From: Octopus sinensis | Taxonomy: Eukaryota | Length of the DNA stretch: 64,000 nucleotides | Reading direction: 5' to 3' | Assembly: GCF_006345805.1 (NCBI RefSeq) | Contig: NC_043011.1 | Coordinates: forward strand, 59,904,464-59,968,463 | Part shown: positions 2,035-63,090 of the stretch, piece after piece | Layout: every line of letters begins with the position of its first letter | How positions within the stretch are numbered: position 1 is the stretch's first letter | Notes under the pieces: model-generated | The model's input: the letters and a program-made list of their open reading frames with translations, nothing else | Told to the model about the DNA's origin: nothing | Databases searched by the model: none | Program-made: the position numbers and the translations under genes

Positions 2035-2426
2035 GAGGTAAGTAGCTTGCTTGCCAACGACATGGTTCCGGGTTCAGTCCCACTGCGTGGCACCTTGGGC
2101 ATGTGTCTTCTGCTATAGCTAAGGGCTGACCAAAGCCTTGTGAGTAGACTTGATACATGGAAACTGAAAGAAGCCCATTGTATATATGTGTGTGTGTATG
2201 TGTGTGTGTGTGTGAGTGTTTGTATGTCTGTGTTTGTCCCTCCCCATCACTTGACAACCGATGCTGGTGTGTTTACATCCCTGTAACTTAGCAGTTTGGC
2301 AAAAGAGACCAATAGAATAAATACTAGGCTTACAAAGAATAAGTCCTGGGGTCGATTTGTTTAACTAAAGGTGGTGCCCCCGCATGGCCACAGTCAAATG
2401 ACTGAAACAAATAAAAGAATAAAAGA
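2035..2426 (+). mobile_element. SINE family A inserted into a TTAA MITE (further family A copies about 3722-4130 -, 13164-13323 +, 19525-20115 -, 29280-29640 +, 30590-31430 +, 48398-48776 +)
   Basis: Same head, body and tail as 10941-11360; MITE halves at about 1890-2034 and 2427-2495. Confidence 0.8.
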
Positions 2427-5078: not shown

Positions 5079-8000
5079 TCCTTGGGTCAATCCTGACCAA
5101 AGACATTCAAGCCATGACTGTCACTCAGTTAGTGGTAGAGAGCAAAGTATGTAACTTGAAACAGATTTGGCTGCTATTTCTAGCATGCTGCATAGCTCTG
5201 TGGAGACATCCATTGGCTTTCCATAAGAATTGATTTCTGAATTTGGTGGAGCGAGTGAGCAAGAAGGAGATGAGTGAAAGAGAGAGAGGGAGTTCTGGCT
5301 ACATTTCATTGGCAGATGTTTTGACAAATTGTCAGCCTTGTTCACTTGGGAATTGTTTGTGCCACTCTCAATAATTCAATGGATATCAGTTTCTGTACAG
5401 CTGTAAACAACAGGCTATAATTAGCTTATGTAACATCCGATTTCATAATTTAGCCAATAATATTGAATGATTTGAATAAGGAGAAATATTGTGAAAATCT
5501 AATAATATCGGTGTGGCAGTATGGTTATGAAGTTGAGGCAGGATTTTATGGTTGGATGCACTTCCTGTTGCTAACCCTCACCTATTTTACATATAAGGTA
5601 TTTTTGTTTTATATATGTTCCACAGTTCTTTAAAAGTACAGAGTGACCAGTCATAATGTCAACAGGGAATGCCAACATTACTGCTGCATCACGCAAATGA
5701 TAACAAGTGAAATATCAACATTGACACACACACACACACACACACACACATCATGAAGAAAGAAATGTATAGAGATGCAAATGAGATACCAAGATTACAA
5801 GATGGAACAAAAGTTTTATAGTGAAGTTTGACATTTCTTTGGTTCCAATTTAATGGTTTGTGTAAATGGCTTTCAATCAGGGTCCCTTTGACCCTTGGGG
5901 ATCCATATAATGATTTTTTTTGTTAAAATTTATGTGTAAGAAATTAATTATAGACTTCTACAATACATCAAATATCTTGAACAATTTTTTTATACAAATC
6001 CTAATAATATTTAATTCTAAAAATATAATGGAATTTTTGAGACATTGGCCCTGAGGCTCCATCTGAGTAAAATAAGAATCAAAGGAGTTCATCAGTAAAA
6101 AATTGTCAGGAATCACTGGTTTATACCAATTCTTCAGGATGAAATAGAATGGACCTAAAGACATTTTTTAAAATTATAAAATGGAGTGAAGAGGAGCCAA
6201 GGTTAAAAAAATGAAGTTATTTGCTTTATTATCTATAAATAGAAATATATATTTTTTTATTTTACTGCTTCCAGTAACTGTATTGTAGCCATGCTGGGAT
6301 ACAACCTTCAAGTATTAATTTTTTTTTTCTTGGTAATCTCATTTAAGCACTGCGGATTATGTCGTCATGAGTTCAATCTCTCTGAAAGTATTGTATAGAC
6401 ATATTGCTTAAGGCATATAAGTATTCAACTATTATTGCCTAAAATTTCCTACATTAATAGGAGCTGAAACCCTGCTACACATATTTACCTATTACTAATT
6501 AATTAAGGGTTTTTATTAGTATTTTTACCTGAGTAGTTTTCTCAAGAAGCAATAATTTACTTATATAATAGTTTCCTAGCAGGAAAGTATTTAAAATATT
6601 AAGAAGGATATATTAAAGAAGAAACAGTCATTTTACAAAGGTTTCACAATTTAGAAAGTAAAAGAAAAAAAGTGAAAACTTCAATTAACTATATAAAAAA
6701 AAAAGCCAGATCACTTTTGATAATAAAGATTTAACATAGCAAAATAGCATTTTCTTTGAATGGGTGAAAATACACATAAAATTTTGATTTTATAAATTTA
6801 TAATCATGAAGTTGATAAGATTTGAAACTGAAGAATATTGATTGGAATAGCATGAAGTAGCTGCAAAGAAGCAACAAAGAAATGCAAGCAATTCTGTAAA
6901 GAAAAGAGTTTAGGATGAAAATATGATTGTCATGTGTTAGGTTTGAGTTTGTTGTTTTTATGGCTTAGCCAGAGGAGGATGGGAGAGCCTAACCCCACCT
7001 TTTTTACTGTTTTGTAGGGTCTACCACGAGAAACCCTAACTCAAGGCTTTTCCTCAGAGTGAAAACCTGGTTTGAATACTCGCCACAAAATGGGCTCTAC
7101 TAAAGGTGCCAAAGAACCAGACAATGGGATGAATCAGATCTACCCCGCAGGAGTAGGTGCAGTCCATTTAATGGACTTCTTTTCAGTTCTCTGTCTCCCC
7201 AATTTCATCCACAAGTTTGGGTTGACCTGACGCTATGGCAAAACATAGTAACCCTAGGAACTGTGCAATGGAATCAAACTGATAATCATGTGATTCCAAA
7301 ATAAGTTTGTTAACCACAAGACTATATTCTTGCACTACGTGTTAAACTGGACAAAATTGAAAGGCATGGTGTAGAGAAACAGTGAAAATAGAGATGGTTA
7401 TACAGGTAGAACGATGGTGACGACACGTAGTGAAGAAAAACAGGTTAACTTCTTCACACACAAAAGGGTATTGTTTACTCATATACAAGATCAAGGCATT
7501 TATGTTTTTCATATTTGAAGAATATTTTCTTATGTTATACAAATCAGGACACTCATAACTTGGCAAATGGATTCTTAACATTGGAACAACAGTTCTGGTC
7601 TTAATTTTGTAAATTTCAATGCAGTATCTATAAGTCTTTTGGTCTTGAGAATTCTTACAGATTTTTGGAGTACCTACAGAGTAACAATGATTTCTTCATT
7701 TAAATCTTGTGACAAATTCTACAGAGCTTATGGGTAATGTAGATTGATTCAGAGGGAATGATATAATTTCATTAGAAAAGTAAAGACAAACGACTTTGTG
7801 CTAAAAAAAAAAAAATGAAGATAAAAGCAATATATGTAGGTTATCGGAAATAAAACTCATCTCTAACTTTAATTTTGAGATTTGTTGGAAAGAATTAAGC
7901 TGCAAAATTGATATTTTGCGATGGGGAAAAAAGAAAATAGAAAAAAAAAATGGAATGGCAGAAAATCTTTTAGCGTTTTTCAAAAAAATTTTCAGTTCAG

Positions 8001-10730: not shown

Positions 10731-10940
10731 CTGTAAAAACAAGCAGGGAAGAAAGTAATTAGAATTCAATAAAATAATTATTAAAAAACGAAATAAGCAA
10801 GGTAGAATATCAGAAACGTTTTGAGAAAAAGTGTAGAAGTGATTATGTGAATGAATCCAATTCCTTGTTTAAACTTAGAATGCAGACCCCATGATGTGGG
10901 ATGGGAAAACAATGCAGAATTTGAAACCAGAATGTAAGAA

Positions 10941-11360
10941 AGGCGCAGGAGTGGCTGTGTGGTAAGTAGCTTGCTAACCAACCACATGGTTCCGGGTTCA
11001 GTCCCACTGCGTGGCATCTTAGGCAAGTGTCTTCTGCTATAGCCCCGGGCCAACCAATGCCTTGTGAGTGGATTTGGTAGACGGAAACTGAAAGAAGCCT
11101 GTCGTATATATGTATATATATGTATGTATGTGTTTGTGTGTGTGTTTGTGTGTCTGTGTTTGTCCCCCTAGCATTGCTTGACACCGATGCTGGTGTGTTT
11201 ACGTCCCCGTCACTTAGCGGTTCGGCAAAAAGAGACCGATAGAATAAGTACTGGGCTTACAAAGAATAAGTCCGGGGTCGATTTGCTCGACTAAAGGCGG
11301 TGCTCCAGCATGGCCGCAGTCAAATGACAGAAACAAGTAAAAGAGTAAAGAGTAAAGAGA
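10941..11360 (+). mobile_element. tRNA-derived SINE family A, young full-length copy
   Basis: A-box tggctgtgtgg, B-box ggttcagtccc, CORE-like tcttaggcaagtg, internal (TA/TG)n, (gagtaaa)n tail. Confidence 0.85.
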
Positions 11361-12995: not shown

Positions 12996-13723
12996 TGTGT
13001 AAAGATAAGGCAATTTTGCAAAGTTAATAACATGTAAATTGGTGATACAACCAAAGGCATAACAGAAAGGTTCAATTATACTCATTTCAGTGACAGTAAT
13101 AAAAGAAAATAATAAAACAAACTCAGTTCATTGACCGAGCCAATTAGTTATACTTCAAAAATAAGATGCAGGTGTGGCTGTGTGGTAAGAAACTCGTTTC
13201 TCAACCACGTGGTTGTTGGTTCAGTCCCACTTTATGTCACCTTGGGCAAGTGTCTTCTGCTATAGCCTTAGGCTGTAGTGAGTGGATTTGGTAGATGGAA
13301 ACTGAAAGAAGCCTATCGTATATGAAACTAGAATTTTGCAAAGTTATTTTACTCACTTAGTTTTACATGTTAACATTTTGTATGGTTTTTCAAAAGTGTA
13401 AGATTTCATGGATGTGGGTATGTGTCACGAATTATGCACTCACATACACATACACATGCAGCTATGTTTGTGAGTGTGTGTATGTATAAAATACACACAT
13501 ATATATATATATGTGTGTGTGTATGTGTGTGTTTGTGAGTGCGTATGTATATATATATGCATTAAGCATCAAAATGTGAAATCATTGATGATCTGGCTAT
13601 ATCTGTGACCGTAGGAAGTTTGCCTCCCTTGTCAGTCATTAAGATAGTGCTTCAGTGGCTATCGAGTTGTTTTGACTCTTATTTCTAGCAATGCTGGTAC
13701 CAATTAGTGCTCTTTGTCATTTT

Positions 13724-14151
13724 AGGCACAGGAGTGGCTGTGTGGTAAGTAGCTTGCTTACCAACCACATGGTTCCGGGTTCAGTCCCACTGCGTGGCAT
13801 CTTGGGCAAGTGTCTTCTGCTATAGCCCCGGGCCAACCAATGCCTTGTGAGTGGATTTGGTAGACGGAAACTGAAAGAAGCCTGTCGTATATATGTGTAT
13901 ATGTATATATATGTATGTGTGTGTGTGTGTGTGTATCTGTGTTTGTCCCTCCTAGCATTGCTTGACAACCAATGCTGGTGTGTTTACGTCCCCGTCACTT
14001 AGCGGTTCGGCAAAAGAGACCGATAGAATAAGTACTGGGCTTACAAAAGAATAAGTCCCGGGGTAGATTTACTCGACTAAAGGCAGTGCTCCAGCATGGC
14101 CGCAGTCAGATGACTGAAACAAGTAAAAGAGTAAAAGAAAGAGTAAAAGAG
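13724..14151 (+). mobile_element. tRNA-derived SINE family A, young full-length copy
   Basis: Nearly identical to 10941-11360. Confidence 0.85.
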
Positions 14152-23732: not shown

Positions 23733-24197
23733 CTAAAAAGAAACATAAGAAAATAGTGGAATGGTAAGTATTTTCACATAAATTGAAGGACAGATGGAGT
23801 TGTAGTTATTTCAGGAAACCAATTCTTCACACACACAAAATGGAGAAGGCTTACAACTAAAAAGAGGAAAAAAATGAAATGCAGTTGGGCCCAGGATGGG
23901 AGAAGCAGCAGAAAGATCCTGTTGCTGGTTATGGAGCAAAGGAGAGGAGGTGTGCTCTTGCGGTGATTTTACTAGTTAAACTGGAAGCCAGATGGTGATG
24001 ACGAGCAGTAATGTGGCCACCTCTGCTGACCCACAAATGGGAAGGTGTTATGGTAGAGAGTCGATCATTGAATATCATCTGGTGATATCAATTCCTCCTT
24101 GTTAAAGGTATATCAGACAAACGTGAATAAAGAAACAGCTTCTTTTAGATGCTATAAATATCATGTTATGTACGTATGTGTGTGTGAGTACGCATCA

Positions 24198-24654
24198 TAT
24201 CATCATCATCATCATCGTTTAACATCTGTTTTCCGCGCTAGCACAGGTTGGACTGTTCAACTGGGGTCTGGGAAGCCAGGAGGCTGCACCAGGCTCCAGT
24301 CTGATCTGGCAGAGTTTCTACAGCTTGATGCCCTTCCTAACGCCAACCACTCCGTGAGTGTAGTGGGTGCTTTTTACGTGCCACCTGCACAGGTGCCAGG
24401 GGGGTCTGGCATCGGCCACAATCGGTTGAAGCTTTTAACGTCCCACCGGCACGGTAGCCAGCCAAGGCAGCGCTGGCAACGCCCACGTTCGGATGGTGCT
24501 TTTTATGTGTCACCGGCACAGAAGCCAGTCAGGGCAGCGCTGACATCGGCCACGTTCGGATGGAGTTTTTTATGTGCTACCGGCACAGAAGCCAGTCGAG
24601 GCGGCGCTGGCAACGGCCACGTTTGGATGGTGCTTTTTATGTGCCACCGGCACC
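24198..24654 (-). mobile_element. SINE family C with (GAT)n tail and internal ~65-bp tandem units (other copies about 15301-15630 -, 17595-17842 -, 26085-26430 +, 40128-40370 +, 40770-41320 -, 50283-50480 -, 55995-56220 -, 62090-62265 -)
   Basis: Shared gttggcgttaggaagggcatccagctgtagaaac core and gcttttta(c/t)gtgccaccggcac units. Confidence 0.8.
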
Positions 24655-25696
24655 ACACACACATATATATTTATGTACACACACACATACATGTGTGAGT
24701 GTCTGTGTGTGTGTATAAAACCATCATCGTATCTACTTTTCTATGCTTGCATGGAACAGATTTTCTACTGCAGGGTCCCCTCCTCATTGCTAACCCCCAT
24801 CTGTTTCCAAGTAGAGCAATATTTCACTATGGCCAGATACTTGTTTTTTTTATGGAGGACCAGAAATGAACAACTTCACTCGTATGATGGTGATGCTCAT
24901 TTGTAATCATCTCCTGATGTGAAGACAAGGTTATCCATCCACCCATCCATATTATGTCTTTACTACCCACAAGGGAATAAACACAGAGGGGACAAACAAG
25001 GACAGACAAAGGGATTATGTCAATTACATCGACCCCAGTGCATAACTGGTACTTATTTAATCGACCCTGAAAGGATGAAAAGCAAAGTCGACCTTGGCGG
25101 AGTTTGAACTCAGGATGTAATGGCAGATGAAATACCGCTAAGCATTTCACCCGGCGTGCTAACGTTTCTGCCAGCTTGACACCCACCCATCTGCACACAC
25201 ACACAAATAGACAATGATGATGATGACAACGAGGATTGCAATTCTCACCACCACATCTTTTAATGGCATCCATTACTATGTCATCTAATATGTCGCCTCA
25301 TTTTTTTAAGACAGCAGGCAGTGATTTGACTATTATTCCTAGCAGGTCAGGAATCCTATTTCATCCTGATTTCTTTGAAATTGAATTGAATTCCATCCTG
25401 ATACAGTCTTTTACAGACAGTCCTACCTGGGTGCACTTATACTATTTTTGTTTCAGCTCAAAAGACAGTTAATAATCCTTTCTACTCTAGGCACAAGGTC
25501 TGAAAATTTGGGGGAGGAGGTTAGTCGATTAGATCAACCCTAGTACGCAACTGGTACTTAATTTATTGACCCTGAAAGGATGAAAGGCAAAGTTGACCTT
25601 AGCGGAATTTGAACTCAGAATGTAGCAACCAACAAAATACCGCTAAGCATTTCGTCCATCTTGCTAACAACCCCGTCAGCTTGCCGCCTTCAAGAC

Positions 25697-34433: not shown

Positions 34434-34683
34434 CTGAGAGACTTTGGTGCAGAAACAGGAATGGAAATAGTGAGCTCTGGTTGTTGTTCATCGTTGTGTA
34501 AATTTTTATCAGCATTCTTTATCACAGCATGGTTTTCATCAGTCATTTTAGAGACTGTGGAGACTTTGGTCAGCGGTATGAAGTTATGGTCTAGGATGAA
34601 CAGATCCTCAGAAGATATATCAGTGATATAGTGTAAATGCTCTTGAGCCTTGTCAATTCGAAAGAATCGTTCAGCTGTTGTTG
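34434..34683 (-). CDS. DGKZ: DGK exon: (S)[31 protein letters not shown] plus variable linker to PKSL
   Basis: Acceptor ttccttttAG, donor GTaaaa; 250 nt, phase 1 to 2; resembles DGKZ [22 protein letters not shown]. Confidence 0.93.
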
Positions 34684-34856: not shown

Positions 34857-35868
34857 TACAGTTCTATATTTAAGAGATGAGGAATTACGTACATTATTTA
34901 CATTTAACGGATATTTGTCCTCATCTTGTTTGTTGTTAACACAACGTTTCAGCTGATATACCCTCCAGCCTTCATCAGGTGTCTTGGGGAAATTTCGAAC
35001 CTGGGTTCTCATTCCTAAGGTATTTTTTGATGTTATGATTATTATTATTATTATTCAAGTCACTGCCTGGAATCGAAAAGGCCTCTCCAAAAAGATACAA
35101 AAGATATGCGGCCCATATGACATCAGGATAGTATTCAAGAGTAATACAACACTTTGCAAATATCTCCTTCGAGTAAGACCACCAACAGAAGAGAATATGA
35201 CTAAAGACTGCGTGTACTCCATCCCATGCAGCTGTGGTAGGTTATATGAAGCTGAAACATGCAACCCCCTTAAAATAAGGGTAGATGAACATCGCAAAGC
35301 TGTGACATGAGGCGATATTGATAAATTGGGTATAGCTGATCATGTATGGAAAAATGGAGACCACCTCCCCCTGTGGGATGAAGTTAAAATAACAGATAGA
35401 GAACACCACTGGAAAATATGAAAACTAAATGCTAGGACACAGCAACCTCCTAAGCAGACCGAGTGCAGATATGAGCAGCATATGGGAACCGGTATTGAGG
35501 AAGGATAGAAAATATTTGATTTATCAGCCCTAAAATTCACTCCATAATTGCCCACTGGCATATGGCATAGTGGTTAAGAGTGCAGGTTACTAACCCCAAG
35601 ATTCCAAGTTTGATTCCAGGTTGTGACCTGAATAATAATGATAATAACAACATCAAAAAATTCCTTATTTACAATAGGACAAATTCTTTTACAATAGGAC
35701 AAATTTATATTATTTAATCTTGACCGAAGTAAGGCTCTATAACCTCACTACCTCCTCCTGGTCCAAAAAAAAAAAAAATTTCCCAAGACGGCTGGAGGGT
35801 ATATCAGCCGAAACATGTTAACAACAAACAAAATTAGGACAAATATCCGTCAATGTAAATAATGTACA
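34857..35868 (+). mobile_element. 5'-truncated Penelope-like element with decayed GIY-YIG endonuclease and head-to-head inverted terminal repeats (pLTRs)
   Basis: 35077-35533 reads KGLSKKIQKICGPYDIRIVFKS..CVYSIPCSCGRLYEAETCNPLKIRVDEHRKAV*..GIADHVW..LWDEVKITDREHHWKI*..LGHSNLLSRPS, with stops and a frameshift; typical PLE GIY-YIG. Inverted pLTR copy at 34857-35077 (minus), direct pLTR at about 35557-35868 (plus). Confidence 0.9.
34938..34983 (-). ncRNA. Minimal type I hammerhead ribozyme motif (PLE type)
   Basis: Minus strand GACAC-CUGAUGA-A-GGCUG(GAGGGUAUAU)CAGCU-GAA-AC-GU-U-GUGUU: stem I GACAC/GUGUU, stem II 5 bp, palindromic loop-less stem III ACGU, GUU cleavage triplet. Confidence 0.75.
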
Positions 35869-36359
35869 CATACAGACATCTTAATTTAATATGCAGGCAT
35901 TTTGTTTTATGTGAAACTAGTGACTCTCACAGAACACACATATGCAAAATTGAATGAAATTTGTTCAAGGAATATTCTGTAGCTATTCTGCTGGGTTGGA
36001 TAGAGATGCTTAGCACTTTAAATTTTCTCTCTTTCTCACAGTAAAACAATTTATTTCACTTCTGGATTGTTTTGTTGATGTGAAGCATCCTCTTTGTTTA
36101 AAAGCTGCTTCAATTTATAAACGGTTTCAATGAATGTTGATGTAATTTTATAAGTGCAACAACACTTTTGGAATATAAGAGAAAGTCGTAATATCTCTGG
36201 TCACGCATGTCCCACAATTATAAAACTAGAAACAAAAACAAGAACACAACAAGAGGAATTCAGAAAATGGCAGCACAAATTCGAGAGAATTCCATCAGCA
36301 CAAGTCCACACATTTTGAAAGAAGCACTGTAACCAATTACATTAACTCAGTACTTTATA

Positions 36360-36925
36360 TATTATTGAGTTTAGAAGGAGAAAGTCCAAGGCTGATCTTG
36401 GAGTAATTTGAACAAAGGTTGCAAGCATGCTTATAGAAAGTAAAGAGGGGAAGAGAGAAGAATTGGGAGGCAGCAGGGTTGGATTGTAGGTGGCGGAAGA
36501 GAGGGAAGATTGGAGGATAGTGCATTATAAGGGCAAGGTGGTAGGTAAGGAAAAAGGGAATGTGATGGGTGGGATTCCAGGTACAGGGTGCAAGGGCTGG
36601 GGTGTAATCAATGCTACAGGTATGGAAGACAGCACACTGAATAAGAGTGCATAGGTGGGTAACCACAGGTAGGTCATGTGACGAGCCTGTGACTAAAAGC
36701 TGTGGTTAATGCAGCAGAGACACCAGAGATGGAAAAACTAGGAATAAGGGATGGAACACATGGTGTGGGTGAGGTGCAAGAAACAGTTAAGGTAGGAATG
36801 GGAGTTTGTGGGTTTGGTGAAGACAGAGGTAGACAGGATGAGGATAGGGTGGGTGATGGAGATGGTGATGTCAAGAAAATGAAAGGAGGTATTGGAGATG
36901 GAATGCAAAGAGATGTAACTGAATA
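36360..36925 (-). mobile_element. Decayed Penelope-like reverse transcriptase C-terminal fragment
   Basis: Frameshifted pieces HSISNTSFHFLDITISI..STSVFTKPTNSHSYLN..H..SIPYS and HIPFFLTYH..LFRHLQSNP resemble the PLE RT thumb region. Confidence 0.75.
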
Positions 36926-37167
36926 CCACAAGGTATTGGGTTCAACATTCTATTATTTCTGTCAATTCCCCATCATCTATTATCTTTTTATGATGACTTC
37001 AATTATATCTAAACTTATGAGCCAATCGAAAGAAGGAAATTGAACATTGAAAGAAACAAACATTTTCACAAACAAAAAATAAAATAAATAAAATGACAAC
37101 AATTACTGGATGCAACAAATATGTTGATACATACTTCCTCATAGTTATTCACTACTGAAGGTTATGT

Positions 37168-37168
37168 A

Positions 37169-37218
<50 letters not shown>

Positions 37219-37356
37219 TTGATATATATATATATATATATGTGTGTGTATATATATATATATACTGATATATATATATAATATACTGATATATATATAT
37301 ATATACTGATATATATATATACTGATATATACATATATATATATACTGATATATAT

Positions 37357-37398
<42 letters not shown>

Positions 37399-37417
37399 AT
37401 ATACTGATATATATATA

Positions 37418-37472
<55 letters not shown>

Positions 37473-37474
37473 TG

Positions 37475-37510
<36 letters not shown>

Positions 37511-37530
37511 TATATAGATATATATATATG
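37168..37530. repeat. (TA)n tract with recurrent ACTG interruptions
   Basis: atatatactgatatat recurs about 8 times. Confidence 0.9.
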
Positions 37531-39213
37531 TACACTTCCTTATAGCAGTTTGCCAATAATTGGATATTACAAAATATTGATATTTACTTCCTTATAGTTA
37601 TTCATCAATTATTGGACGTTATGAAATATATTGATTATGTTATTCCTCATAGTTATTCACCAATTATTCCCCCAATATATTTACTTGAGCTAACAAAGGA
37701 ACCTCTCTTCAGGCACTGAATCTGCTAGAAACAGCAGACAAATCTTAATCAAATTATATCTTACTGGGTTAAATAAAAAAAAATGGACATATTGAACAAT
37801 GTGGTCAGATATATAAATACACACACACACACACACACATAAATAGCCATAGTGGGAACATCTTTCATTACAGGTCTGCTTCATGAGGGCTGACCTAGGG
37901 CTAAACATCAAGTAGAGGGTCTAATGAAATAACTGGATAGACATATCCAATTACTGAAATAATCTTTACATAGTAACAGCCAATATAAAAACCGGTTCAT
38001 TTCTCCAGTGTAAAAGAAAGATACATAAGAAATGTAGGATGTGTGCACATACTAGGCTATGTGGCATACAATGAATGAAAGAATCCTGCTTCCACACACA
38101 CTGTGAGAGGGAAAGAATCATAGAGAGAGGTAAATGACAGAATAGTCATATAAATGAGAAATTTGTCTAATTTCAGGGTGATATATATTCTAGTTTTCAA
38201 AATATATATTCATTTTGTTATGTTGTTTAAGCACCAAAGAATATGATAAAAGTTGAATAATGATTTTTTTCTCCTTCCTGATATTACTCAAAACTATACT
38301 CAAGTTATAATAATATTTAGCCATCAGCAAAAGTTGTCATTTCCTCATGCATAAATATTTCTAATTAGATTTTTGATAGTAACTACATTAAATATATTAA
38401 CACTAACTTAGCTATTGTTTAATTAATCTCTATAGTTTATTTTATTAAATCATTAAATAGAGTAATATATGTACTAAGCATCAATTCTTAAGATTGATTT
38501 TTATTGCTAAAAATGTTACTGACGACATTGATGTCAAAACATAAAAACAATTTAATATAATTTTGTTGATTATGATCAAAGTGCTATTATCATATTAAAT
38601 ATTGCTCATTAATGTTTAGTTCTAAGAGACAGGTGTTCTCTTCAAGGTAAACTTTGACCATAAATTACAATTTAATTGCATTTGAGATGAGGTATTTAAT
38701 ATTTATAATTACAAAAATGTAAGTGAACAACAGTGAAAATACACTTCTGGTTGCATAAAGCCTCAAGCACTCACCAAAATGAGAAGATGAAATTAAAACT
38801 AAATTATAGAAATGTTGCTTTACCCAAAGATGTATTCAATTACTACCTGCAAGTCAAAATTTCCATTGATGAACAGCCAAACTTAAATGTAGTGAGCGGA
38901 AAATAATTTTTAACCAATTCAAATTAAACACACAATGAGAAGAAAAATCATTAGCATTAGTAAAAAATTATGCTAATGAAGTTCTCTCCCTTGCCTTCTT
39001 TAGCAAGAATTTTTAACACCAATGTTTTGCTTTTCATTATGAATGTAATTTTTATTTATTAAGAATTCTTTTTAGCTCACTATATTTAGTATGACAGGCT
39101 GCACTTAACTATATGTTCTTTATGCAGAAGGTATTATTGGGAAATTTTTTTCCAGTATCATATACACACAAATATAGAAGAGGCTCACACACAAGTTTAT
39201 AAAAAGTACTTAC

Positions 39214-39268
39214 AGTCTAAAAAACACCAATTCAACGGCATTTCATCAACTACTGGACCAAATGTTTC
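39214..39268 (-). CDS. DGKZ: DGK exon: ETFGPVVDEMPLNWCFLD
   Basis: Acceptor gttgttttAG, donor GTaagt; 55 nt, phase 0 to 1; conserved WCFLD. Confidence 0.92.
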
Positions 39269-39510
39269 CTAAAACAACAAAACATTTTAATTTTGGTTTT
39301 TCGCTCAAAATCATTTGCATCAATTTATTTATTTATTTAGTTATTTTTTAACTTCTGTTTACTTTAAAGACCAGTAAACTAAAACAATAAATGAACAGTT
39401 TGAAAGACAGCAATTTATTGAACTTTACTCACAGAACAGGTCATCTACAAGTTTTCTTCTATTATGATTCCATTCACATCTAGAAAGTTCTAGAGGAGTA
39501 TTAAATCTAC

Positions 39511-39797
39511 AGCTCTATATTTAAGAGATGAGGAATTATATACATTATTTACATTTGACGGATATTTGTCCTCATCTTGTTTGTTGTTAACACAACATTT
39601 CGGCTGATATACCCTCCAGCCTTCATCAGGTGTCTTGGGGAAATTTCAAACCTGGGTTCTCATTCCTAAGGTATTTTTTGATGTTATTATTATTATTATT
39701 ATCATTATTATTATTAGTATTCAGGTCACTGCTTGGAATCGAACTCGAAATCTTGGGGTTAGTAGCCCGCACTCTTAACCCCTACGCCATATGCCCT
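39511..39797 (-). mobile_element. Solo tRNA-headed, hammerhead-bearing unit (SINE-like solo pLTR of the 34857-35868 PLE)
   Basis: A-box TGGCGTAGGGG, B-box GAGTTCGATTCC, (AAT)n spacer, then sequence nearly identical to 34857-35077. Flanked by tattaaatctaca (39499-39511) and tattaaacctaca (39798-39810). Confidence 0.85.
39589..39634 (-). ncRNA. Minimal type I hammerhead ribozyme motif, second copy
   Basis: Minus strand GACAC-CUGAUGA-A-GGCUG(GAGGGUAUAU)CAGCC-GAA-AU-GU-U-GUGUU; perfect stem II, C15.2 to U leaves a U.G pair in stem III. Confidence 0.7.
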
Positions 39798-41096
39798 TAT
39801 TAAACCTACACCAGTAAATTGTTGTCTTTCAAACTGTTCATCTATTGTTTTATTTTAGTATTAAATCCACACCAAAACTCAGCTGGTATTTTAATTTAGC
39901 ACCGGAAAGATAACAACAAAGTTGGATTTGAACTCATAATGCAAATAACTGTAACAAGATATAGCAGATATTTTGTTTGGGGACTCTTCTGACTCTGAGT
40001 CACCAATACATCCAAACCAGACTGTTCTAACAGGATCCAATCCATTGTAAGCATTCAGAGCAGGAGCCAGTCTTAGAGATTCTGCAGAATAAATCATCAA
40101 AATCAAAAGGAATTTGTAGTTGTGATCCCCGTGCCATGTAAAAAGCACCATCTGATCATGGTCATTGCCAGCCCCCTCTGACCCCTGTGCTGGTGGCATG
40201 TAAAAAGCACCCACTACATTCATGGAGTGGTTGGCGTTAGGAAGGGCATCCAGCTGTAGAAACACTGCCAGATCAGACTGGAGCCTGGTGCAGCCTCCTG
40301 GCTTCCCAGAGCCCAGTCGAACCGTCCAACCCATGCCAGCATGGAAAATGGACGTTAAATGATGATGATGTATTGTCATTCGTTTGACTTTGTCATCAAA
40401 GCATACAAAATTCAAATTTATCCATTGCCATTTCATTTGGTCAACCTGAGGCTACAGTAAAAGACGCTTTGCCCAAGGCAAGAGAGTTCATTCATTGATT
40501 TTTTTAATGATGAATTTGATTCTTATTGGAGTCTTTGTTCCTTAAATACAAAATATCAATTTGCTTTACGTCTTAAACATAGCAAAACTAAACATTAGAA
40601 AAACATAATGAAATAGAAGACTACAAAGAAAATGGTGATGATCTGTATTGACAGAAACTATAAAGTGAAAATAATGAGTCTGGACATGTTTTTATGGTAA
40701 GGGTAGAACAGCAACCTGATGTTTTGGAACTGACAATTTGTTGTTGTCATCGTCATCCCCACACATCATCGCCATCACCATGATCACACATCACTGCTCC
40801 ATGCTGGCATGGGTTAGATGGGTTGACAGAATCTGATGGGTTAATCTTATTTCTTTATTGTCCACAAGAGGCTAAACATAGAGGGGACAAAAAAGGACAG
40901 ACAAAGGGATTAAGTTGATTACATCGACCCCAGCATGCAACTGGTACTTAATTTATCGACCCCGAAAGGATGAAAGGCAAAGTTGATCTCGGCGGAATTT
41001 CAACTCAGAATGTAACGGCAAACGAAATACCGCTAAGCATTTTGCCCAGTGTGCTAACGTTTCTGCCAGCTCACTGCCTTCTAAAAGTACAAATGT

Positions 41097-43795: not shown

Positions 43796-46523
43796 CCAGC
43801 ACCAGTCAATTTTAATTTTTCAGCTTCCCAGGTCTACAGAAGTACCAGGAAAAAATACTCTGGTTGAGATAATCAAGTAAACCTTTCAAGCCATTGCTCC
43901 AGCATGGCCACAGTTCAATGACGGAAACCAGCAAAAAGACAAACAGAAGACAATAGAAGCTTAATTCCATTGGTCTCCTCTGTGTTCTAGTATTTCACAT
44001 TTGTATATCTCCTCTCAGTTCTTAATCTATTTTACTGGGATCCATCGTGTAACTGTAGTGTTGGAAAAGTCAAGATATGACGTTCAGCAGATGTTAAAAT
44101 ACTGGAGAGATATACATCATCTTAGCTTCTGTGGAGAAGCAAGATGATGTATACTTCATTTTCATTAATATTTAAGCATCTTTAAGCTGCTAACACCATA
44201 TGTTCCCTCAAACTTGTACACTAGTACCACTATAACCAAAACTATTATCACGTTACTATTAAACAACAACAGCCACCACTGCCACCGCATGCAACTACTA
44301 ACAACAACAACAATCATCATCATTTATTCACCACTTTTCCACGCTTGGATGGGTGAGACACAATTTGTTGAGGCGGACTTTTTATGGCTGGATGCTCTAC
44401 CTCTTCCCAACCCTTACCTGTTTCCAGGCACGCTTTCACAGGAGTTTGAAAATGAAGGACACTGTTTGTTTGATAGTAACAACCATCATGCAAATGTCGA
44501 GGCAAAAAGACTAACATGGGGTGCTGTGCAAGGGTCTGGCAAAAGACAGTTGAGTGTGCACACACAATGATAGGAGAACCAGACCCTCAAAAACGGCCTT
44601 AGGATTATTAACTGGATTAGTAACACCCAGACTCTTAACTCTTTTTTATGACTTTGTCTTATAATCTGTAAGTCGACTGGATTATGTCTATGTATTTTCA
44701 CTATATTTTTAATGTATATATATCTACATTTTTATATATCTTTATATGTATATTTTTATGTATTGATTACTCTATATATTTCTTTATATATTTTTGATAT
44801 GTTTGATGTATTGAATAAACTTGCGGAGAAATTCATACATGCTGGGTCCAGGGCTGAATAAATATAAGTGTATATGTGGAATTGATATGGCTAAATTTGA
44901 TTCTTACTTCTACACACATACACACACACGTTTCAGTAGCTGTTTATCAAATCTGCTTACAAGGCTTTGATTGGCCTGGGGTTATAGTAGAAGATGATTA
45001 AAGTGAGACACAGTGGGATTGAACCCAGATCCATGTGGTTGGCAAGCAAACTTAATATCACGTCTGTGTCTAATAATAGCAATAATTATTTCTGGCATAG
45101 ATACAATGTCAGAAATTTGAAGGAGAAGGATACAGATGATTACAGAGACCCTAATAATCGATTGGTACCTTATCAACTGACAGGGTGAAAGGTGCTTATG
45201 CACTAAGTGTAAGGACCCAAACCAAATACTGCAAGGCATTTTCTCCAGCACCCTAACAATCCAACAAATCACCTGCCATGATGATGATGATGATGATGAC
45301 GATGATATAGGCACAAGGCCTGAAGTATGTTAAGAGGGAGCTAGTTAATTACATTGACCCCAGTGTTCAACTGGTACTTATTTTATTGACCCTGAAAGGA
45401 CGAAAGGCAAAGTCGACCTCAGTGGTATTTGAACTCAGAACGTAAGGACAGATGAAATGCTGCTAAGCATTTTGCCTGGTGTGCTAACGATTCTGCCAGC
45501 TCACCACCTTCTTAATAAAAATAATAATAATCTATGTTATTAGTTCTTCTACCATAATTACAATCACTATTGCTGCTGCTGATACTAGCACCACTACTGC
45601 TACCACTACCACCACTACCACCACCACTACTGTTCTCATCTCTAATGTTTGGAACGATGATGTAAAACATGAGAATATTATCACTTATATTAAAAACAAA
45701 AAAAAAAGCAAATCTCAATAAAACTGAAAAAAACCTCTCGTTAGATTACTAAAACCCAATCGTTAATAGGTTTAATGAAGTATGCTGCAATAAAGTGCTA
45801 GATTCTAATAAGATTATTATATTTTGGTCTATTAATCTCATCTTAAATGGAAATATTTTTGACATTCCCATTTACACTCATAATTTGCTGGCTTTTGGTC
45901 CCAACTGATAGCTTTTTTTTTTTTGTTACTGCTTGATGGGCGTGGGTGTGTAGCACCCAAGATTCATTTCCTTTTTTTAGTGGGGTCTATGAAACTGGTC
46001 AGTGGAAGTGAGGAAGCCATCCTCAAATTGATGATTGTAACCTGACCTGAATGCTTGCAACAGAGTGAAGTCCACTAAAAATGTCCACAGACCAGTTGGA
46101 GTAGATTAAGATTACCAACTGAGTGGAGAAGTTTGCTTCTCAGCCATGTGGCTTTGGACTCAGTGGAACCATGCAACACCTTGGGTAAATGTCTTCAACT
46201 ATAGACCCAGACTGGCCAAAACCTTGTGAGTAGTATTGGTGATCACTAAGGAAAAATAACAGCATCATGTATGTATATCACTGTTCAGTTTTATTTCAAG
46301 ATTTCTTGCCAATAGAGAAAGAGCCAGTTTCTAACCTAGATTCAAGGCTCCTTCATTGGAATTTCAACATCAACAACAGGGTATTTTTATATGTATGTAT
46401 GTATGTACACACACACACACACATACATAGGGTAGTGATAAATTGTCTTCACAACTGTCATGATTTATTGCATCAAAGTGTAAAGCTACTTTATCGATAC
46501 CCTGTATACAACCTGTATGTATG

Positions 46524-51896: not shown

Positions 51897-52520
51897 GATC
51901 TGGGGATCGGAAAATAAGTGTAAGCCAGTGTCAACAATGGCTCCAGAAATTCTGAGCTGGAAGCTATAGCCTAGAAGATGAGCCTTGTCCTGGAAGATCT
52001 GTAGAGCTCGATTAAGACATCCGGCAAACCTTGGTGGAACAAAATCATAACTGTTGAAGAACTAGCAGAGAAGCTTGCATTTGATCATTCAACCATTCAC
52101 CGACACTTGTATACCATCGGAAAACAACCATCTTTGGTTTCAAGATGAAAGGTATTCTTCCATCAGGATAATGCTCAGCCACATACAGCGAGGATGACAT
52201 TCCAAAGGCTGGAGCAGTTTGAATGGAAAATGATGCCCCATCCACCATATTCATTGGACATTGCCCCATCTGATTATCATTTATTGCAAAGTCTTCAAAA
52301 CCATTTGGATGGAAAAATATGAATTCTGTAGACAAGGTTAGAACAATACAGAAGTCAGAGACAAGTGAATTTTGGAAGAGGGGCCTTGCAAGTCTACCAG
52401 GTAGATGGAAGAGCATTGTAGAAAATGCAGGAGAGTATATTTTAAGTTAAAAAAGAACTTTGTTTATCTTTATTTTGAAGAATAAAAGAAATATAAAATA
52501 TTTATGGAATGACTCAATTT
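51897..52520 (+). mobile_element. Internally deleted mariner transposase remnant
   Basis: SQCQQWLQKF*AGSYSLEDEPCPGRS, TVEELAEKLAFDHSTIHRHL (HTH), FFHQDNAQPHTA, HPPYSLDIAPSDYHL, LPGRWKSIVENAGEY; mariner-like 3' end near 52500-52520. Confidence 0.9.
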
Positions 52521-55500: not shown

Positions 55501-56585
55501 ATTTGTTGATACCTAAGAAATCAATATCTGATAACTTTCTTATTCAAAGATACTTCAAAGTTTCATAGTTATTCTATGTGTAAGAGGCAGATAAAGCTCA
55601 CCAGAATGAAACTATTTGAATACTTGAAAATCTTTTCAATTTCCATAACTACAAAGTATTAGAGATGTCAGAGGTGTCAGAGAATATTGTCAGCAAACTA
55701 AAGAAGCAGTGGGTTAGTGTTGTGTCGAGTAGGATGTCTGAAGAGGAAGAATAAGCAGAGAGTAGCAGTGAAGATGTCCAGAAAGCAGTAGAATAGCAGA
55801 ACTATTGAGGAGTGGCAATAACTGGGAAGTAGCAAGAAAATGTAAGGAGTTTAGTAGGAGATTGTGAGTTCAAATCCCACCACAGCAAGTTAATGATACT
55901 TTGACATCTGTAATATTAATATCAGTAATATTTTGAGATTAATTTAATTTCCACCCTCCTTGCAGAGAAATTAGCTTTGTACATGGTTGACTTAATCATC
56001 ATCATCACCTGTTTTTCTTGCCGGCATGAGTTGGATGGTTTGACAGGATTTGGCAAGCCACAGACTTGCACCAGGCTCCAATTGTCTGTTTTGGTATGGT
56101 TTTTGCAGCTGGATGTCCTTCCTGATGTGAACCATTTTACAGAGTGTACTGGATGCTTTCTACATGGCACTGACCTGACACAGGTGCCTTTTAACTGGCA
56201 CAGGCATAGGTGTCTTTTGTAGGGCCACAGACTGGATTTGAACTATGTATGTATCTATAGCTGGCTTTGGGTTCTATCAGTTGGTTGTTGCATTTCTGTG
56301 TCTCAGATTACTTCTTAGCTGTTATTTCATTTATAATGTTTAATTAACGATATCAACAAGAAAAGTCTACTAATCATGACACGTTAGATATAGGAGCTAA
56401 CTCTAGAGTACATCATGAATTTTACTACAGGAATTTCTGGTGGCATTAAATATATTTAATATTTACATCTATTCTTTTCACTTAAAGACATTGTAAACTT
56501 ATCTTAAAATGTTATATGTTTTAAAAGTATCTTTACAGCCTTGGGATATCACACACACCCACCCACCCATACACACGCACACACA

Positions 56586-61699: not shown

Positions 61700-62075
61700 C
61701 CTGGACTTGAGATCTTTATAGCTCATCACATGTTGAAGGTTGAATTTTTCTTTTTTGCGATTCAGAGGCAACAAATAAATACAAAATACCTGTAGAACAA
61801 ATGCGACAGTGAAGACCATAAACTCTGCAGAAACAACTGAAATGCTGATTTTGGAATGGGTGTTCCTTTAGCTTCAAATATTTTATGATAGGGATGTTAA
61901 TGCAACTATAAGTAACTTTTAAATCATTTCTGTTGAACATCTTGCAATTTGTAGTAGTTTTGTACATAGATGAGTCCTTAACAAGCGGGCCTATGACTAA
62001 AGGGAGTTTATTCAGGATTAGTTCCACAGCAATTTCTAGCAAGTTAAGCAACCACAAACAGTTTCCCTCGTAGGC
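61700..62075 (-). mobile_element. Decayed Penelope-like element fragment (pre-GIY-YIG region)
   Basis: KMFNRNDLKVTYSC resembles the PLE motif KIFNRNTxKxSYSC. Confidence 0.55.
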
Positions 62076-62327
62076 TTGTGCAACTTCATCACCATCATTT
62101 AACATCTGTTTTTTCATGCTGGCATGGGTTGGATGGTTTGACAGGAGCAGGCAAGCCATGAGCTACACCAAGTTCCACTGCCTGTTTTGGCATTGTTTCT
62201 ACAGCTGGATGCCCTTCCTAAAGCCAACCACAGGGTGCTTTTTACATGGCACAGGCATGTACCTTGCAAGACAAAACTCCATCAACTACGAGCGAGAGGA
62301 TTTGAGTAAATGATTGTTATATAAGCT

Positions 62328-62622: not shown

Positions 62623-62715
62623 AAGTTTCCAGTTTTGGTGGACTTTGTTATTGTTAAGTGATGAGAAGAAGAAAAAAAATGCATAAGAATGAAATAAGAA
62701 AAATTGGGAACTTAC

Positions 62716-62912
62716 TCAAGTATTGGCATCGATCCACGTCTCTTACATTTCTGGATCATGTTAGCTTGATTTTTAAGATTAATTATGATCGTGGAAGGTT
62801 TTAATTTGCACGGTTCACCATCAACTTGCATAGGTATTGTTTTGTAGGTAGTCAGCTTCACCTCTTGACACTGTGTCAGTCGTTCTCCATGACCACCGAC
62901 CTGTACTGTTGC
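62716..62912 (-). CDS. DGKZ: DGK exon, kinase accessory domain end: [65 protein letters not shown](D)
   Basis: Acceptor tttctatttcAG, donor GTaagt; 197 nt, phase 0 to 2; contains the DGK accessory motif QVDGEP. Confidence 0.95.
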
Positions 62913-63090
62913 CTGAAATAGAAACGAAATATTATTATACAGGTTTATTGCGAATGAATTAGCTGGCAGGAGTTTCAGTATAGAACAGCATTGGGGACAT
63001 TATGATCAGGTGTCTGAGACAGAATGGACACATGTGGTTTAAGCCAGGAGACTTCTTTCTCTTTACTGTCTCAAGTGATTACTGTTGCAT

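What the first reader, a model, noticed from the sequence alone, without database searches (positions are those of the whole stretch)
34938..39634. Two same-strand minimal hammerheads bracket the 55-nt WCFLD exon in the DGK pre-mRNA
Seen: both motifs are on the minus (DGK sense) strand, with predicted cut sites at 39594/39593 and 34943/34942, 4651 nt apart, either side of exon 39268-39214. Established: minimal type I hammerheads with a palindromic loop-less stem III cleave mainly as dimers, and paired hammerheads release RNAs with 5'-OH and 2',3'-cyclic phosphate ends that can circularise (retrozymes). Inference: the two copies could form a double hammerhead in cis, excising an exon-containing ~4.65-kb RNA or aborting some transcripts; loss of the 55-nt exon shifts the frame. 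Each copy has one weakening substitution and the triplet is GUU, so activity may be low.
Basis: inference. Interest (0 to 1): 0.7.

Follow-up and report, generated by a model that had tools for sequence, protein, structure and literature searches.

The report
Retrotransposon hammerhead motifs in DGK introns
The two hammerhead-like motifs are real, but they are the standard minimal ribozyme carried at the 3' end of a Penelope-like retrotransposon that landed twice in neighbouring introns of an octopus diacylglycerol kinase gene, so this is an ordinary transposon footprint rather than a gene-regulating device.

Summary
Observation confirmed. Both motifs lie on the minus strand at the stated coordinates. 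The cut sites (39594/39593 and 34943/34942) are 4651 nt apart. They flank a genuine 55-nt exon of a type IV (zeta/iota-like) DGK.

The motifs are not free-standing. They sit in two 95%-identical copies of a repeat: A at 39508-39796, and B at 34857-35077, which is 5'-truncated. A third, inverted copy (C, 35557-35866) has lost the CUGAUGA box. C directly follows a decayed retrotransposon endonuclease remnant (35077-35505).

The same order (RT, endonuclease ORF, box A/B-like segment, hammerhead, tail) recurs in Octopus vulgaris and in other contigs. Helix II covaries between families.

The architecture matches the published "min-HHR" of Penelope-like elements (PLEs). It has an extra nucleotide between A9 and G10.1, a G10.1-C11.1 pair, a palindromic 15.2-16.2 pair, a 6-bp helix II, a 5-bp helix I and no loop 3.

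Such motifs show no cleavage as single copies and only weak cleavage as dimers in vitro. Each copy here also carries one CpG-to-TpG change.

Excision of an exon-containing 4.65-kb RNA in cis is not excluded, but nothing supports it. Verdict: new member of a known kind, low interest.

The parts
39589..39634 (-). Min-HHR of copy A. Order: helix I, CUGAUGA, extra A, 6-bp helix II with 8-nt loop, GAAA, loop-less helix III (A-U and U.G), U17. Predicted cut 39594/39593. G10.1-C11.1 is intact. Position 15.2 is U where the family has C (CpG to TpG).
   Evidence: 81.6 bits with model R1
34938..34983 (-). Min-HHR of copy B, same architecture. Predicted cut 34943/34942. C15.2-G16.2 is intact. Position 11.1 is U where the family has C (CpG to TpG), giving G10.1.U11.1.
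   Evidence: 81.4 bits
39508..39796 (-). Repeat copy A. It comprises a segment with pol III box A/B-like motifs (about 39796-39721), an (AAT)n tract (about 39716-39676) and a roughly 170-nt body with the HHR and a 3' tail hairpin. Homology to the other copies starts exactly at the 5' end of the box A/B-like segment. Its 3' end lies 240 nt upstream of exon 39268-39214.
34857..35077 (-). Repeat copy B, 5'-truncated within the box A/B-like segment. Its 3' end lies 174 nt upstream of the exon that starts at 34683. Its truncated 5' end abuts the inverted endonuclease remnant with no spacer.
35077..35505 (+). Decayed C-terminal ORF of a Penelope-like element (GIY-YIG-type endonuclease region: ...CVYSIPCSCGRLYEAET...RVDEH...ADHVW...). 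It has in-frame stops and a frameshift.
   Evidence: (18 homologues, 42-88% identity, including an Octopus vulgaris ORF). RT ORFs with YVDD lie just upstream of the homologous ORF in L004.
35557..35866 (+). Repeat copy C, the 3' UTR of the truncated PLE, antisense to DGK. The box A/B-like segment is present. The HHR remnant at 35780-35829 has lost ACCTGATGAA and 3 nt of helix III, so the ribozyme is dead.
   Evidence: (40.5 bits)
39214..39268 (-). 55-nt DGK exon (ETFGPVVDEMPLNWCFLD plus 1 nt) between the two motifs.
34480..34683 (-). Start of the next DGK exon ((S)[31 protein letters not shown]...). Its 3' end was not determined.
62715..62999 (-). Upstream DGK exon encoding the end of the DAGK accessory domain (open reading frame fragment; exact splice sites not determined).

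Best explanation
The two motifs are copies of the minimal hammerhead ribozyme (min-HHR) that Penelope-like retroelements (PLEs) carry in their 3'-terminal region (pseudo-LTR).

An octopus PLE family inserted at least twice, in the sense orientation, into two consecutive introns of a type IV diacylglycerol kinase gene.
- Insertion 1 is a short 3'-terminal copy (A).
- Insertion 2 is the inverted, head-to-head pair of 5'-truncated copies that PLEs typically produce: B on the minus strand, and the endonuclease remnant plus C on the plus strand.

In the element's own life cycle the ribozyme is thought to process longer-than-unit transcripts. It would do so by pairing with a second copy, in a domain-swapped double hammerhead whose helix III is the 4-nt palindrome ACGU. 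This role is inferred from the literature and is not shown here.

In the DGK pre-mRNA the two copies are passengers. They are removed with their introns, and any self-cleavage is expected to be rare. Reasons: this ribozyme class is intrinsically weak, each copy has lost one CpG of the core-adjacent pairs, and the partners are 4.65 kb apart and in different introns.

Shown: motif, repeat membership, PLE context, covariation, gene structure. Inferred: inactivity or near-inactivity in the host transcript.
For: 1. Repeat membership. A and B are 95% identical over 199 nt with unrelated flanks. A third copy is inverted.

2. PLE context. In the window, copy C lies directly downstream of an ORF remnant with 18 homologues. 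The order ORF stop, box A/B-like segment, spacer, HHR, tail recurs in O. vulgaris chromosome OX597819.1 (L003) and in ENA contigs L004-L007. L004 has RT ORFs with YVDD immediately upstream. Inverted copies upstream of the ORF recur in L002 and L005. This matches the published PLE insertion structure (PMC8557442).

3. Architecture. The motif meets the published min-HHR hallmarks that were not part of that paper's search descriptor: a nucleotide between A9 and G10.1, G10.1-C11.1, and palindromic 15.2-16.2. It also has a long helix II, a 4-5-bp helix I and no loop 3 (PMC4209133).

4. Family consensus. The O. vulgaris copy L003:6868-6932 has both CpGs (CAGCCGAAACGUU). A and B each differ from it by one CpG-to-TpG change.

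5. Covariation. Helix II is 91% paired across 11 copies. Pair 10.4-11.4 is C-G in 5, U-A in 4 and U-G in 1. Pair 10.5-11.5 is G-C in 7 and A-U in 2. Controls with partners slid by 1-3 columns reach at most 47% paired.

6. Weak activity is expected. The literature reports none for single motifs and low activity for dimers. The A+B dimer scores -19.9 kcal/mol against -25.4 for two monomers. Helix I is out-competed in the native context.
Against: - No Rfam hammerhead model detects the motifs.
- The endonuclease identity rests on motif inspection and on the RT neighbour. Pfam and PDB sequence searches gave nothing, and the AlphaFold model was too poor to use (pLDDT 52).
- The covariation sample is small: 11 copies, many decayed. 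Shuffle controls are only moderately exceeded (18/500 for cells changed on both sides).
- Helix I is poorly kept across families (64% paired).
- No RNA-level data were available, so inactivity in the DGK transcript is an inference.
- Copy A starts exactly at the box A/B-like segment. It could therefore be a SINE-like derivative rather than a truncated PLE.
Confidence: 0.8

Rival explanations
1. The two sense copies pair in cis within the DGK pre-mRNA as a double hammerhead. They cut at both sites and release (and possibly circularise) a 4651-nt RNA that contains the 55-nt exon, or they abort a fraction of transcripts. Either outcome would lower or modulate DGK output.
For: - Both cores are intact. 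The two substitutions still leave G.U wobbles, so every pair can form.
- In the A:B heterodimer each composite ribozyme has only one wobble (direct reading).
- In intact PLEs the natural partner motifs are about 3 kb apart, so a 4.65-kb spacing is not out of range.
- Intronic hammerheads with proposed roles in mRNA biogenesis exist in amniotes (PMC6155905).
Against: - Min-HHRs showed no detectable cleavage as single motifs and only low cleavage as dimers or trimers, mostly at non-physiological Mg2+.
- The predicted dimer is less stable than two monomers, and 4.4 kcal/mol weaker than a consensus dimer.
- Helix I is sequestered in the native context.
- The copies lie in different introns. Copy A can be spliced away before B, 4.65 kb downstream, is transcribed (inference).
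- The arrangement is explained by two unrelated transposon insertions.
- There is no evidence of conservation of the arrangement.
Confidence: 0.05
2. Copy A, and the solo copies of this family in general, is a SINE-like non-autonomous element rather than a randomly 5'-truncated PLE. It would be transcribed from the box A/B-like segment and mobilised by the PLE enzyme through the shared 3' tail, as proposed for the hammerhead-bearing Sm-alpha elements of Schistosoma.
For: - Homology of A to the PLE-linked copies begins exactly at the 5' end of the box A/B-like segment.
- That segment contains TGGCGTAGGGG and GAGTTCGATTCC, which resemble pol III A and B boxes (direct reading).
- It is conserved in the 3' UTR of divergent PLE families.
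- Sm-alpha and Sj-alpha are SINE-like elements with hammerheads (PMC2770079).
Against: - Only one full-length solo copy was seen.
- ARAGORN and the Rfam tRNA model do not recognise the segment, even at E<=10.
- Copy B is truncated inside the segment and is part of a PLE-type inverted insertion.
Confidence: 0.25
3. Chance resemblance. The CUGAUGA...GAAA arrangement is a fortuitous feature of a repeat, amplified by transposition, and has nothing to do with ribozymes.
For: - No Rfam hammerhead hit.
- A relaxed descriptor is expected to match about 4-11 times by chance in a 2.7-Gb genome.
- Helix III cannot form in a monomer.
Against: - The motif is kept at the same place downstream of the ORF in PLE families whose endonuclease regions are only 42-67% identical to the window's. 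Helix II shows compensatory changes.
- It shows all the incidental hallmarks of published PLE min-HHRs.
- The expected number in this window is about 1e-4 to 3e-4.
Confidence: 0.02

Closest known systems
Min-HHRs of Penelope-like elements (Cervera & De la Pena 2014, Mol Biol Evol 31:2941, PMC4209133)
   Same: - Type I topology with no helix III loop.
- An unpaired nucleotide between A9 and G10.1.
- G10.1-C11.1 and a palindromic 15.2-16.2 pair.
- Helix II of 6 bp or more and helix I of 4-5 bp.
- Location in the 3'-terminal or pseudo-LTR region downstream of the RT-endonuclease ORF.
- Mostly found as scattered single motifs from truncated copies, and sometimes as close pairs on opposite strands.
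   Different: Cephalopod examples were not mentioned in the papers read here. In this family the ribozyme is preceded by a conserved segment with pol III box A/B-like motifs and, in Octopus, by an (AAT)n tract. The two sense copies here flank a host exon rather than the element's own ORF.
Sm-alpha / Sj-alpha SINE-like elements of Schistosoma (Ferbeyre et al. 1998; Laha et al. 2000; cited in PMC2770079)
   Same: A short, high-copy non-autonomous retroelement that carries a type I hammerhead downstream of a pol III-type promoter-like region.
   Different: The Schistosoma ribozyme is a canonical, efficient hammerhead with loop-loop tertiary contacts and a real helix III, and Rfam recognises it. 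The octopus motif is the minimal, dimer-dependent kind. The tRNA derivation of its upstream segment is unverified.
Non-LTR retrozymes of animals (Cervera & de la Pena 2020, PMC7229834; Li et al. 2026 bioRxiv 10.64898/2026.07.22.740005)
   Same: Hammerhead-bearing non-autonomous relatives of PLEs. Paired ribozymes release RNAs with 5'-OH and cyclic-phosphate ends that a tRNA ligase can circularise.
   Different: Retrozymes are head-to-tail tandem repeats of about 170-400 bp with canonical type I ribozymes. Here there is no tandem array: the spacing is 4651 nt and the intervening DNA is host sequence. In vertebrates retrozymes are reported to be depleted from introns.
Conserved intronic hammerheads of amniotes (HH9/HH10 in RECK, CTCL, DTNB; De la Pena & Garcia-Robles 2010, via PMC6155905)
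   Same: A hammerhead in the sense strand of an intron of a protein-coding gene, thought to derive from retroelements.
   Different: Those are single, complete, highly active ribozymes, ultraconserved at orthologous positions and matched by Rfam models. The present motifs are young transposon copies (95% identical to each other) that Rfam does not match and that show no evidence of positional conservation.

Membership tests
Hammerhead ribozyme (catalytic core) | Conserved core C3 U4 G5 A6 N7 G8 A9 ... G12 A13 A14, an A15.1-U16.1 pair, and H17 (not G) at the cleavage site | tested here: met
   Both copies read CUGAUGA...GAAA, with A15.1 and U16.1 and with U17. One extra A follows A9.
Hammerhead ribozyme (catalytic core) | Three helices around the core that can form in one molecule | tested here: not met
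   Helices I (5 bp) and II (6 bp) form in the 55-nt fold. Helix III is 2 bp with no loop and can only form between two copies.
Hammerhead ribozyme (catalytic core) | Match to a curated covariance model (Rfam Hammerhead_1, _3, _II, HH9, HH10) | tested here: not met
   No hammerhead family listed at gathering score or at E<=10, even on 101-nt stretches.
Hammerhead ribozyme (catalytic core) | Site-specific self-cleavage giving 5'-OH and 2',3'-cyclic phosphate ends | not testable with these tools
   Needs in vitro transcription or RNA-end sequencing.
PLE min-HHR | [quoted passage not shown] | tested here: met
   An A at 39622 and at 34971. It is invariant in all 11 aligned copies (column 20).
PLE min-HHR | G10.1-C11.1 pair | tested here: met
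   G-C in copy A and in the O. vulgaris copy L003:6868-6932. G.U in copy B. Across copies: G-C in 5, G-U in 5.
PLE min-HHR | Palindromic 15.2-16.2, no loop 3 | tested here: met
   C-G in B and in 7 of 11 copies. U.G in A and in 3 others.
PLE min-HHR | Long helix II and short helix I (4-5 bp) | tested here: met
   Helix II is 6 bp (7 bp in L002). Helix I is 5 bp.
PLE min-HHR | Located in the terminal repeat or 3' region of an element encoding RT plus a C-terminal GIY-YIG endonuclease | tested here: met
   The motif lies about 250-400 nt downstream of the ORF stop in window copy C and in L003-L007. RT (YVDD) ORFs lie upstream in L004. Caveat: the GIY-YIG assignment rests on motif reading only (searches gave no independent support).
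PLE min-HHR | Families with covariation or compensatory changes in the helices | tested here: met
   Two helix II pairs have changes on both sides. 81% of cells are paired, against at most 47% in slid controls. The sample is small.
Non-LTR retrozyme | Head-to-tail tandem repeats of about 170-400 bp, each with a canonical type I hammerhead | tested here: not met
   No tandem array: the copies are 4651 nt apart with unrelated flanks and a host exon between them.
Non-LTR retrozyme | [quoted passage not shown] | not testable with these tools
   No transcript data available.
tRNA-derived SINE | 5' part derived from a tRNA, with a pol III internal promoter | tested here: inconclusive
   Box A/B-like strings are present, and copy A starts at this segment. 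ARAGORN and the Rfam tRNA model find nothing.
Conserved intronic hammerheads (HH9/HH10 type) | A complete ribozyme conserved at an orthologous intron position across species | not tested
   Orthologous DGK introns of other Octopus species could not be fetched because the gene range is too long for the look-up tool. The Rfam HH9 and HH10 models do not match.

The most novel reading that the evidence does not exclude
The two sense-oriented PLE ribozymes mimic the pseudo-LTR pair of an intact element, but with a host exon in place of the RT gene. At a low rate they would act as a cis double hammerhead on the DGK pre-mRNA. That would release a 4651-nt RNA with 5'-OH and cyclic-phosphate ends, which a tRNA ligase could circularise. 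It would also reduce or frameshift DGK output. This would be a transposon-born, ribozyme-based brake on a neuronal signalling gene.
Probability: 0.04. Interest if true: 0.7.

Novelty: new member of a known kind. Interest (0 to 1): 0.25.

Why it matters
As it stands, the main value is for annotation.
- It shows that hammerhead-like hits in this genome should first be checked against Penelope-like element termini.
- It documents a cephalopod PLE family whose 3' region holds a conserved box A/B-like segment followed by a covarying minimal hammerhead.

What these minimal ribozymes do for their elements is still an open question. The papers read here call their function unclear. A family with young, nearly identical copies in a large, transposon-rich genome could be a useful test case.

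If the pair did cut the DGK pre-mRNA, it would be the first example of minimal transposon ribozymes altering a host transcript. Nothing found here points that way.

Tried and rejected
- Rfam at gathering score on the whole window, at E<=10 on 6.5 kb, and on two 101-nt stretches found no hammerhead. It returned only spurious miRNA-like hits on a TA-rich palindrome at about 37.2-37.5 kb.
- A scan of metagenome contigs for a 19-nt core string gave one unrelated GC-rich bacterial contig. The viral contig scan gave nothing.
- A search with the ORF that runs through the repeat found only two Octopus proteins. Neither gave DNA.
- Pfam on the endonuclease remnant and its 17 homologues, and a profile search of PDB sequences, gave no meaningful hit.
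- The AlphaFold model of the endonuclease region had pLDDT 52 and was too poor for a fold search. I did not run one.
- ARAGORN and the Rfam tRNA model on the box A/B-like segment found nothing. The label "tRNA-derived" was therefore dropped.
- I considered whether A and B could be the two pseudo-LTRs of one old element. Rejected: the DNA between them contains a DGK exon conserved across animals, and there is no RT remnant in six-frame translation.
- I considered segmental duplication. Rejected: homology stops at the repeat boundaries.
- I considered an alternative helix III hairpin (GUUG/CAAC). Rejected: it leaves no U16.1 to pair with A15.1.

Full report
**1. The observation**

I read both sites on the minus strand. 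Copy A reads GACAC-CUGAUGA-A-GGCUGG-AGGGUAUA-UCAGCC-GAAA-UG-UU/GUGUU. Copy B is identical except for UCAGCU (11.1 = U) and GAAA-CG.

The numbering gives G12 at 39601 and 34950, U17 at 39594 and 34943, and G1.1 at 39593 and 34942.

A 27-nt string through the core occurs exactly twice in the window and never in shuffles. My own descriptor required:
- CUGAUGA, followed by 0-1 extra nucleotide;
- helix II of at least 4 bp;
- GAAA;
- a palindromic insert of 2-6 nt, then U and H;
- helix I of at least 4 bp.

It finds only these two sites in the window and none in 40 Mb of Markov sequence. By conditional simulation the expectation is about 1e-4 to 3e-4 per window, or about 4-11 per 2.7-Gb genome.

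No Rfam hammerhead model matches, even on 101-nt stretches at E<=10.

**2. The gene**

An ORF fragment at 62715-62999 (minus) hits short diacylglycerol kinase fragments (63-121 aa); 18 of the 32 carry DAGK_acc, and the named ones include a bird DGKI.

The exon at 39268-39214 has AG and GTAAGT splice sites. Spliced to the exon that starts at 34683, it reads ...VVDEMPLNWCFLD|[35 protein letters not shown].

An exhaustive search with the downstream exon returned P0054. This 1185-aa protein has C1, DAGK_cat, DAGK_acc, DGKI and ankyrin domains. It contains ...[47 protein letters not shown].

The exon, its frame and the strand are therefore confirmed. The gene is a type IV (zeta/iota-like) DGK. Copy A ends 240 nt upstream of the 55-nt exon. 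Copy B ends 174 nt upstream of the next exon.

**3. The motifs belong to a repeat**

A and B are 95% identical over 199 nt. The alignment shows that homology stops at the repeat ends.

The full unit, seen in A at 39796-39508, has three parts:
- a segment of about 75 nt with pol III box A/B-like strings;
- an (AAT)n tract;
- a body of about 170 nt that holds the hammerhead and a 3' hairpin.

B is 5'-truncated. BLAST of the unit against the window found a third copy, C, on the plus strand at 35557-35866. In C the hammerhead has lost ACCTGATGAA and part of helix III.

The organism is an Octopus or a close relative. An ORF running through the repeat matches an O. bimaculoides protein at 85%. The neighbouring ORF matches an O. 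vulgaris protein.

**4. The repeat is the 3' end of a Penelope-like element**

Six-frame translation of the interval revealed, on the plus strand at 35077-35505, a decayed ORF...KGLSKKIQKICGPYDIRIVF...CVYSIPCSCGRLYEAET...RVDEHRKAV...ADHVWKNGDHLPLWDEVKI.... It lies directly upstream of copy C. It directly abuts the truncated 5' end of the inverted copy B.

This ORF has 18 homologues. Their consensus, CVYSIPCSCGKIYKGET..RPLKVRLEEH...ADHIW, has a GIY...YxG core with two cysteines inside it and two downstream histidines. That is the feature described for canonical PLE endonucleases (PMC8557442). This assignment rests on motif reading. Pfam, PDB sequence search and an AlphaFold model gave no independent support.

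I fetched nine loci that encode the homologues.
- In O. vulgaris (L003) the ORF stop is followed by the same box A/B-like segment, AT-rich tract and hammerhead. A second, better-preserved copy lies 1.3 kb away on the other strand.
- In ENA contigs L004-L007 the ORFs are 42-62% identical to the window's (60% for L005's P0037 by that same alignment). The same order holds.
- L004 has RT ORFs with ...SPVLANIYM... and RYVDD immediately upstream.
- Inverted copies next to the ORF recur in L002 and L005. [quoted passage not shown]

B, the ORF remnant and C are therefore most simply one composite PLE insertion. A is a second, independent insertion.

**5. The motif is the published PLE min-HHR**

Cervera and De la Pena (PMC4209133) define min-HHRs as hammerheads with no helix III loop that can only work as dimers. 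They list features that emerged without being searched for:
- a conserved G10.1-C11.1 pair;
- palindromic 15.2-16.2;
- consensus families with compensatory changes.

They also describe a long helix II and a 4-5-bp helix I. All of these are met here.

The O. vulgaris copy L003:6868-6932 has CAGCCGAAACGUU. The single differences in A (ACGU to AUGU) and in B (GCC to GCU) are therefore both CpG-to-TpG decay.

On an 11-copy alignment the given structure is 81% paired, against at most 47% when partners are slid. Helix II is 91% paired. Two of its pairs change on both sides: C-G/U-A/U-G at 5/4/1, and G-C/A-U at 7/2.

A covariance model built from this alignment finds only A, B and the damaged C in the window. 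The chance-resemblance reading is therefore very unlikely.

**6. Likely behaviour in the DGK transcript**

The same paper reports no detectable cleavage for a single min-HHR. Dimeric and trimeric constructs gave only low cleavage, mostly at non-physiological Mg2+. A later paper still calls the function of hammerheads in endonuclease-bearing PLEs unclear.

Folding gives the following picture.
- In isolation (55 nt), helices I and II form at about -13 kcal/mol.
- In 221 nt of native context helix II persists. The CUGAUG box pairs with an upstream CAUCA, and the 3' strand of helix I is taken up by a GUUG...CAAC hairpin.
- The domain-swapped double hammerhead of A with B evaluates to -19.9 kcal/mol. 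Two separate monomers total -25.4. Two consensus copies give -24.3 as a dimer and -27.2 as monomers.

These energies ignore tertiary contacts, so they are only indicative.

The two copies lie in different introns. Copy A can be removed by splicing before B, 4.65 kb downstream, is made (inference). I put the functional reading at about 5%.

**7. Comparison and novelty**

The element works like a PLE min-HHR and passes the membership tests for one.
- It is not a retrozyme, because there is no tandem array.
- It is not a conserved intronic hammerhead of the HH9/HH10 kind: the Rfam models do not match, the copies are young, and orthology was not testable.
- Its resemblance to the Sm-alpha SINE-like elements is limited to the general layout.

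Cephalopod min-HHRs were not mentioned in the papers I read. A giant-squid genome paper reports 235 Rfam Hammerhead_1 hits. I rate this a new member of a known kind, with low interest.

The conserved box A/B-like segment in the PLE 3' UTR, and the fact that copy A starts exactly there, is the most intriguing side observation.

Noticed in passing
window 39721-39796 (-), 35557-35625 (+); L003 5412-5470; L004-L007 about 100-250 nt after the endonuclease ORF stop: A segment of about 75 nt with pol III box A/B-like strings (TGGCGTAGGGG/TGGCATAGTGG and GAGTTCGATTCC/GGTTCAATCCTG) is conserved in the 3' UTR of divergent PLE families, upstream of the hammerhead. Solo copy A begins exactly at its 5' end. 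ARAGORN and the Rfam tRNA model do not recognise it. It may mark a SINE-like way of making non-autonomous copies.
   Followed up: partly
window 39540-39580 (-) and 34890-34930 (-); also L007 about 6810-6870: The tail of the element folds into a 9-bp hairpin (AGAUGAGGA ... UCCUCAUCU) just downstream of the hammerhead. The arms are conserved in a PLE family whose endonuclease is only 42% identical. It could be the 3' structure recognised for reverse transcription.
   Followed up: partly
P0034 (Octopus bimaculoides dystrobrevin beta isoform X1, 94 aa): The predicted N-terminus MPMGIWHSGEGWRVYQPKCCVNNKQDEDKYPSK is a translation of this repeat (box A/B-like segment joined to the hammerhead region). 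A copy of the element therefore seems to supply an annotated alternative first exon in another gene.
   Followed up: no
window 37157-37554: A 400-nt TA-rich, near-perfect palindromic microsatellite (arms about 153 nt, 80% complementary) lies in the same intron. It produces spurious sub-threshold Rfam miRNA hits (mir-3149, mir-297, mir-568).
   Followed up: partly
window 2031-2364, 3794-4160, 10784-11256, 13720-13983 and others: There are many copies of another short interspersed repeat (translated fragments such as PRSGTEPGTMWLVSKLLTTQPLL, followed by TG/TA microsatellite). From memory it resembles the abundant Octopus SINE. The window is very repeat-rich.
   Followed up: no
window 24099-24698 (+), 39891-40436 (-), 44214-44570 (+), 55925-56242, 62074-62310: A further repeat family (translated fragment ...GWTVRLGSGKPGGCTRLQSDLA.FLQLDALPNANH...) occurs several times. 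One copy lies immediately upstream of repeat copy A.
   Followed up: no
window 52005-52447 (+): A mariner-like transposase remnant (...FHQDNAQPHTARMT...PYSLDIAPSDYHLLQSLQNHL...) broken over three frames.
   Followed up: no
L009 6363-9930: In one fetched locus the PLE 3' UTR is interrupted by about 3 kb that includes a zf-CCHC (gag-like) ORF. As a result the hammerhead lies 3.5 kb downstream of the endonuclease ORF. This is a nested insertion.
   Followed up: no
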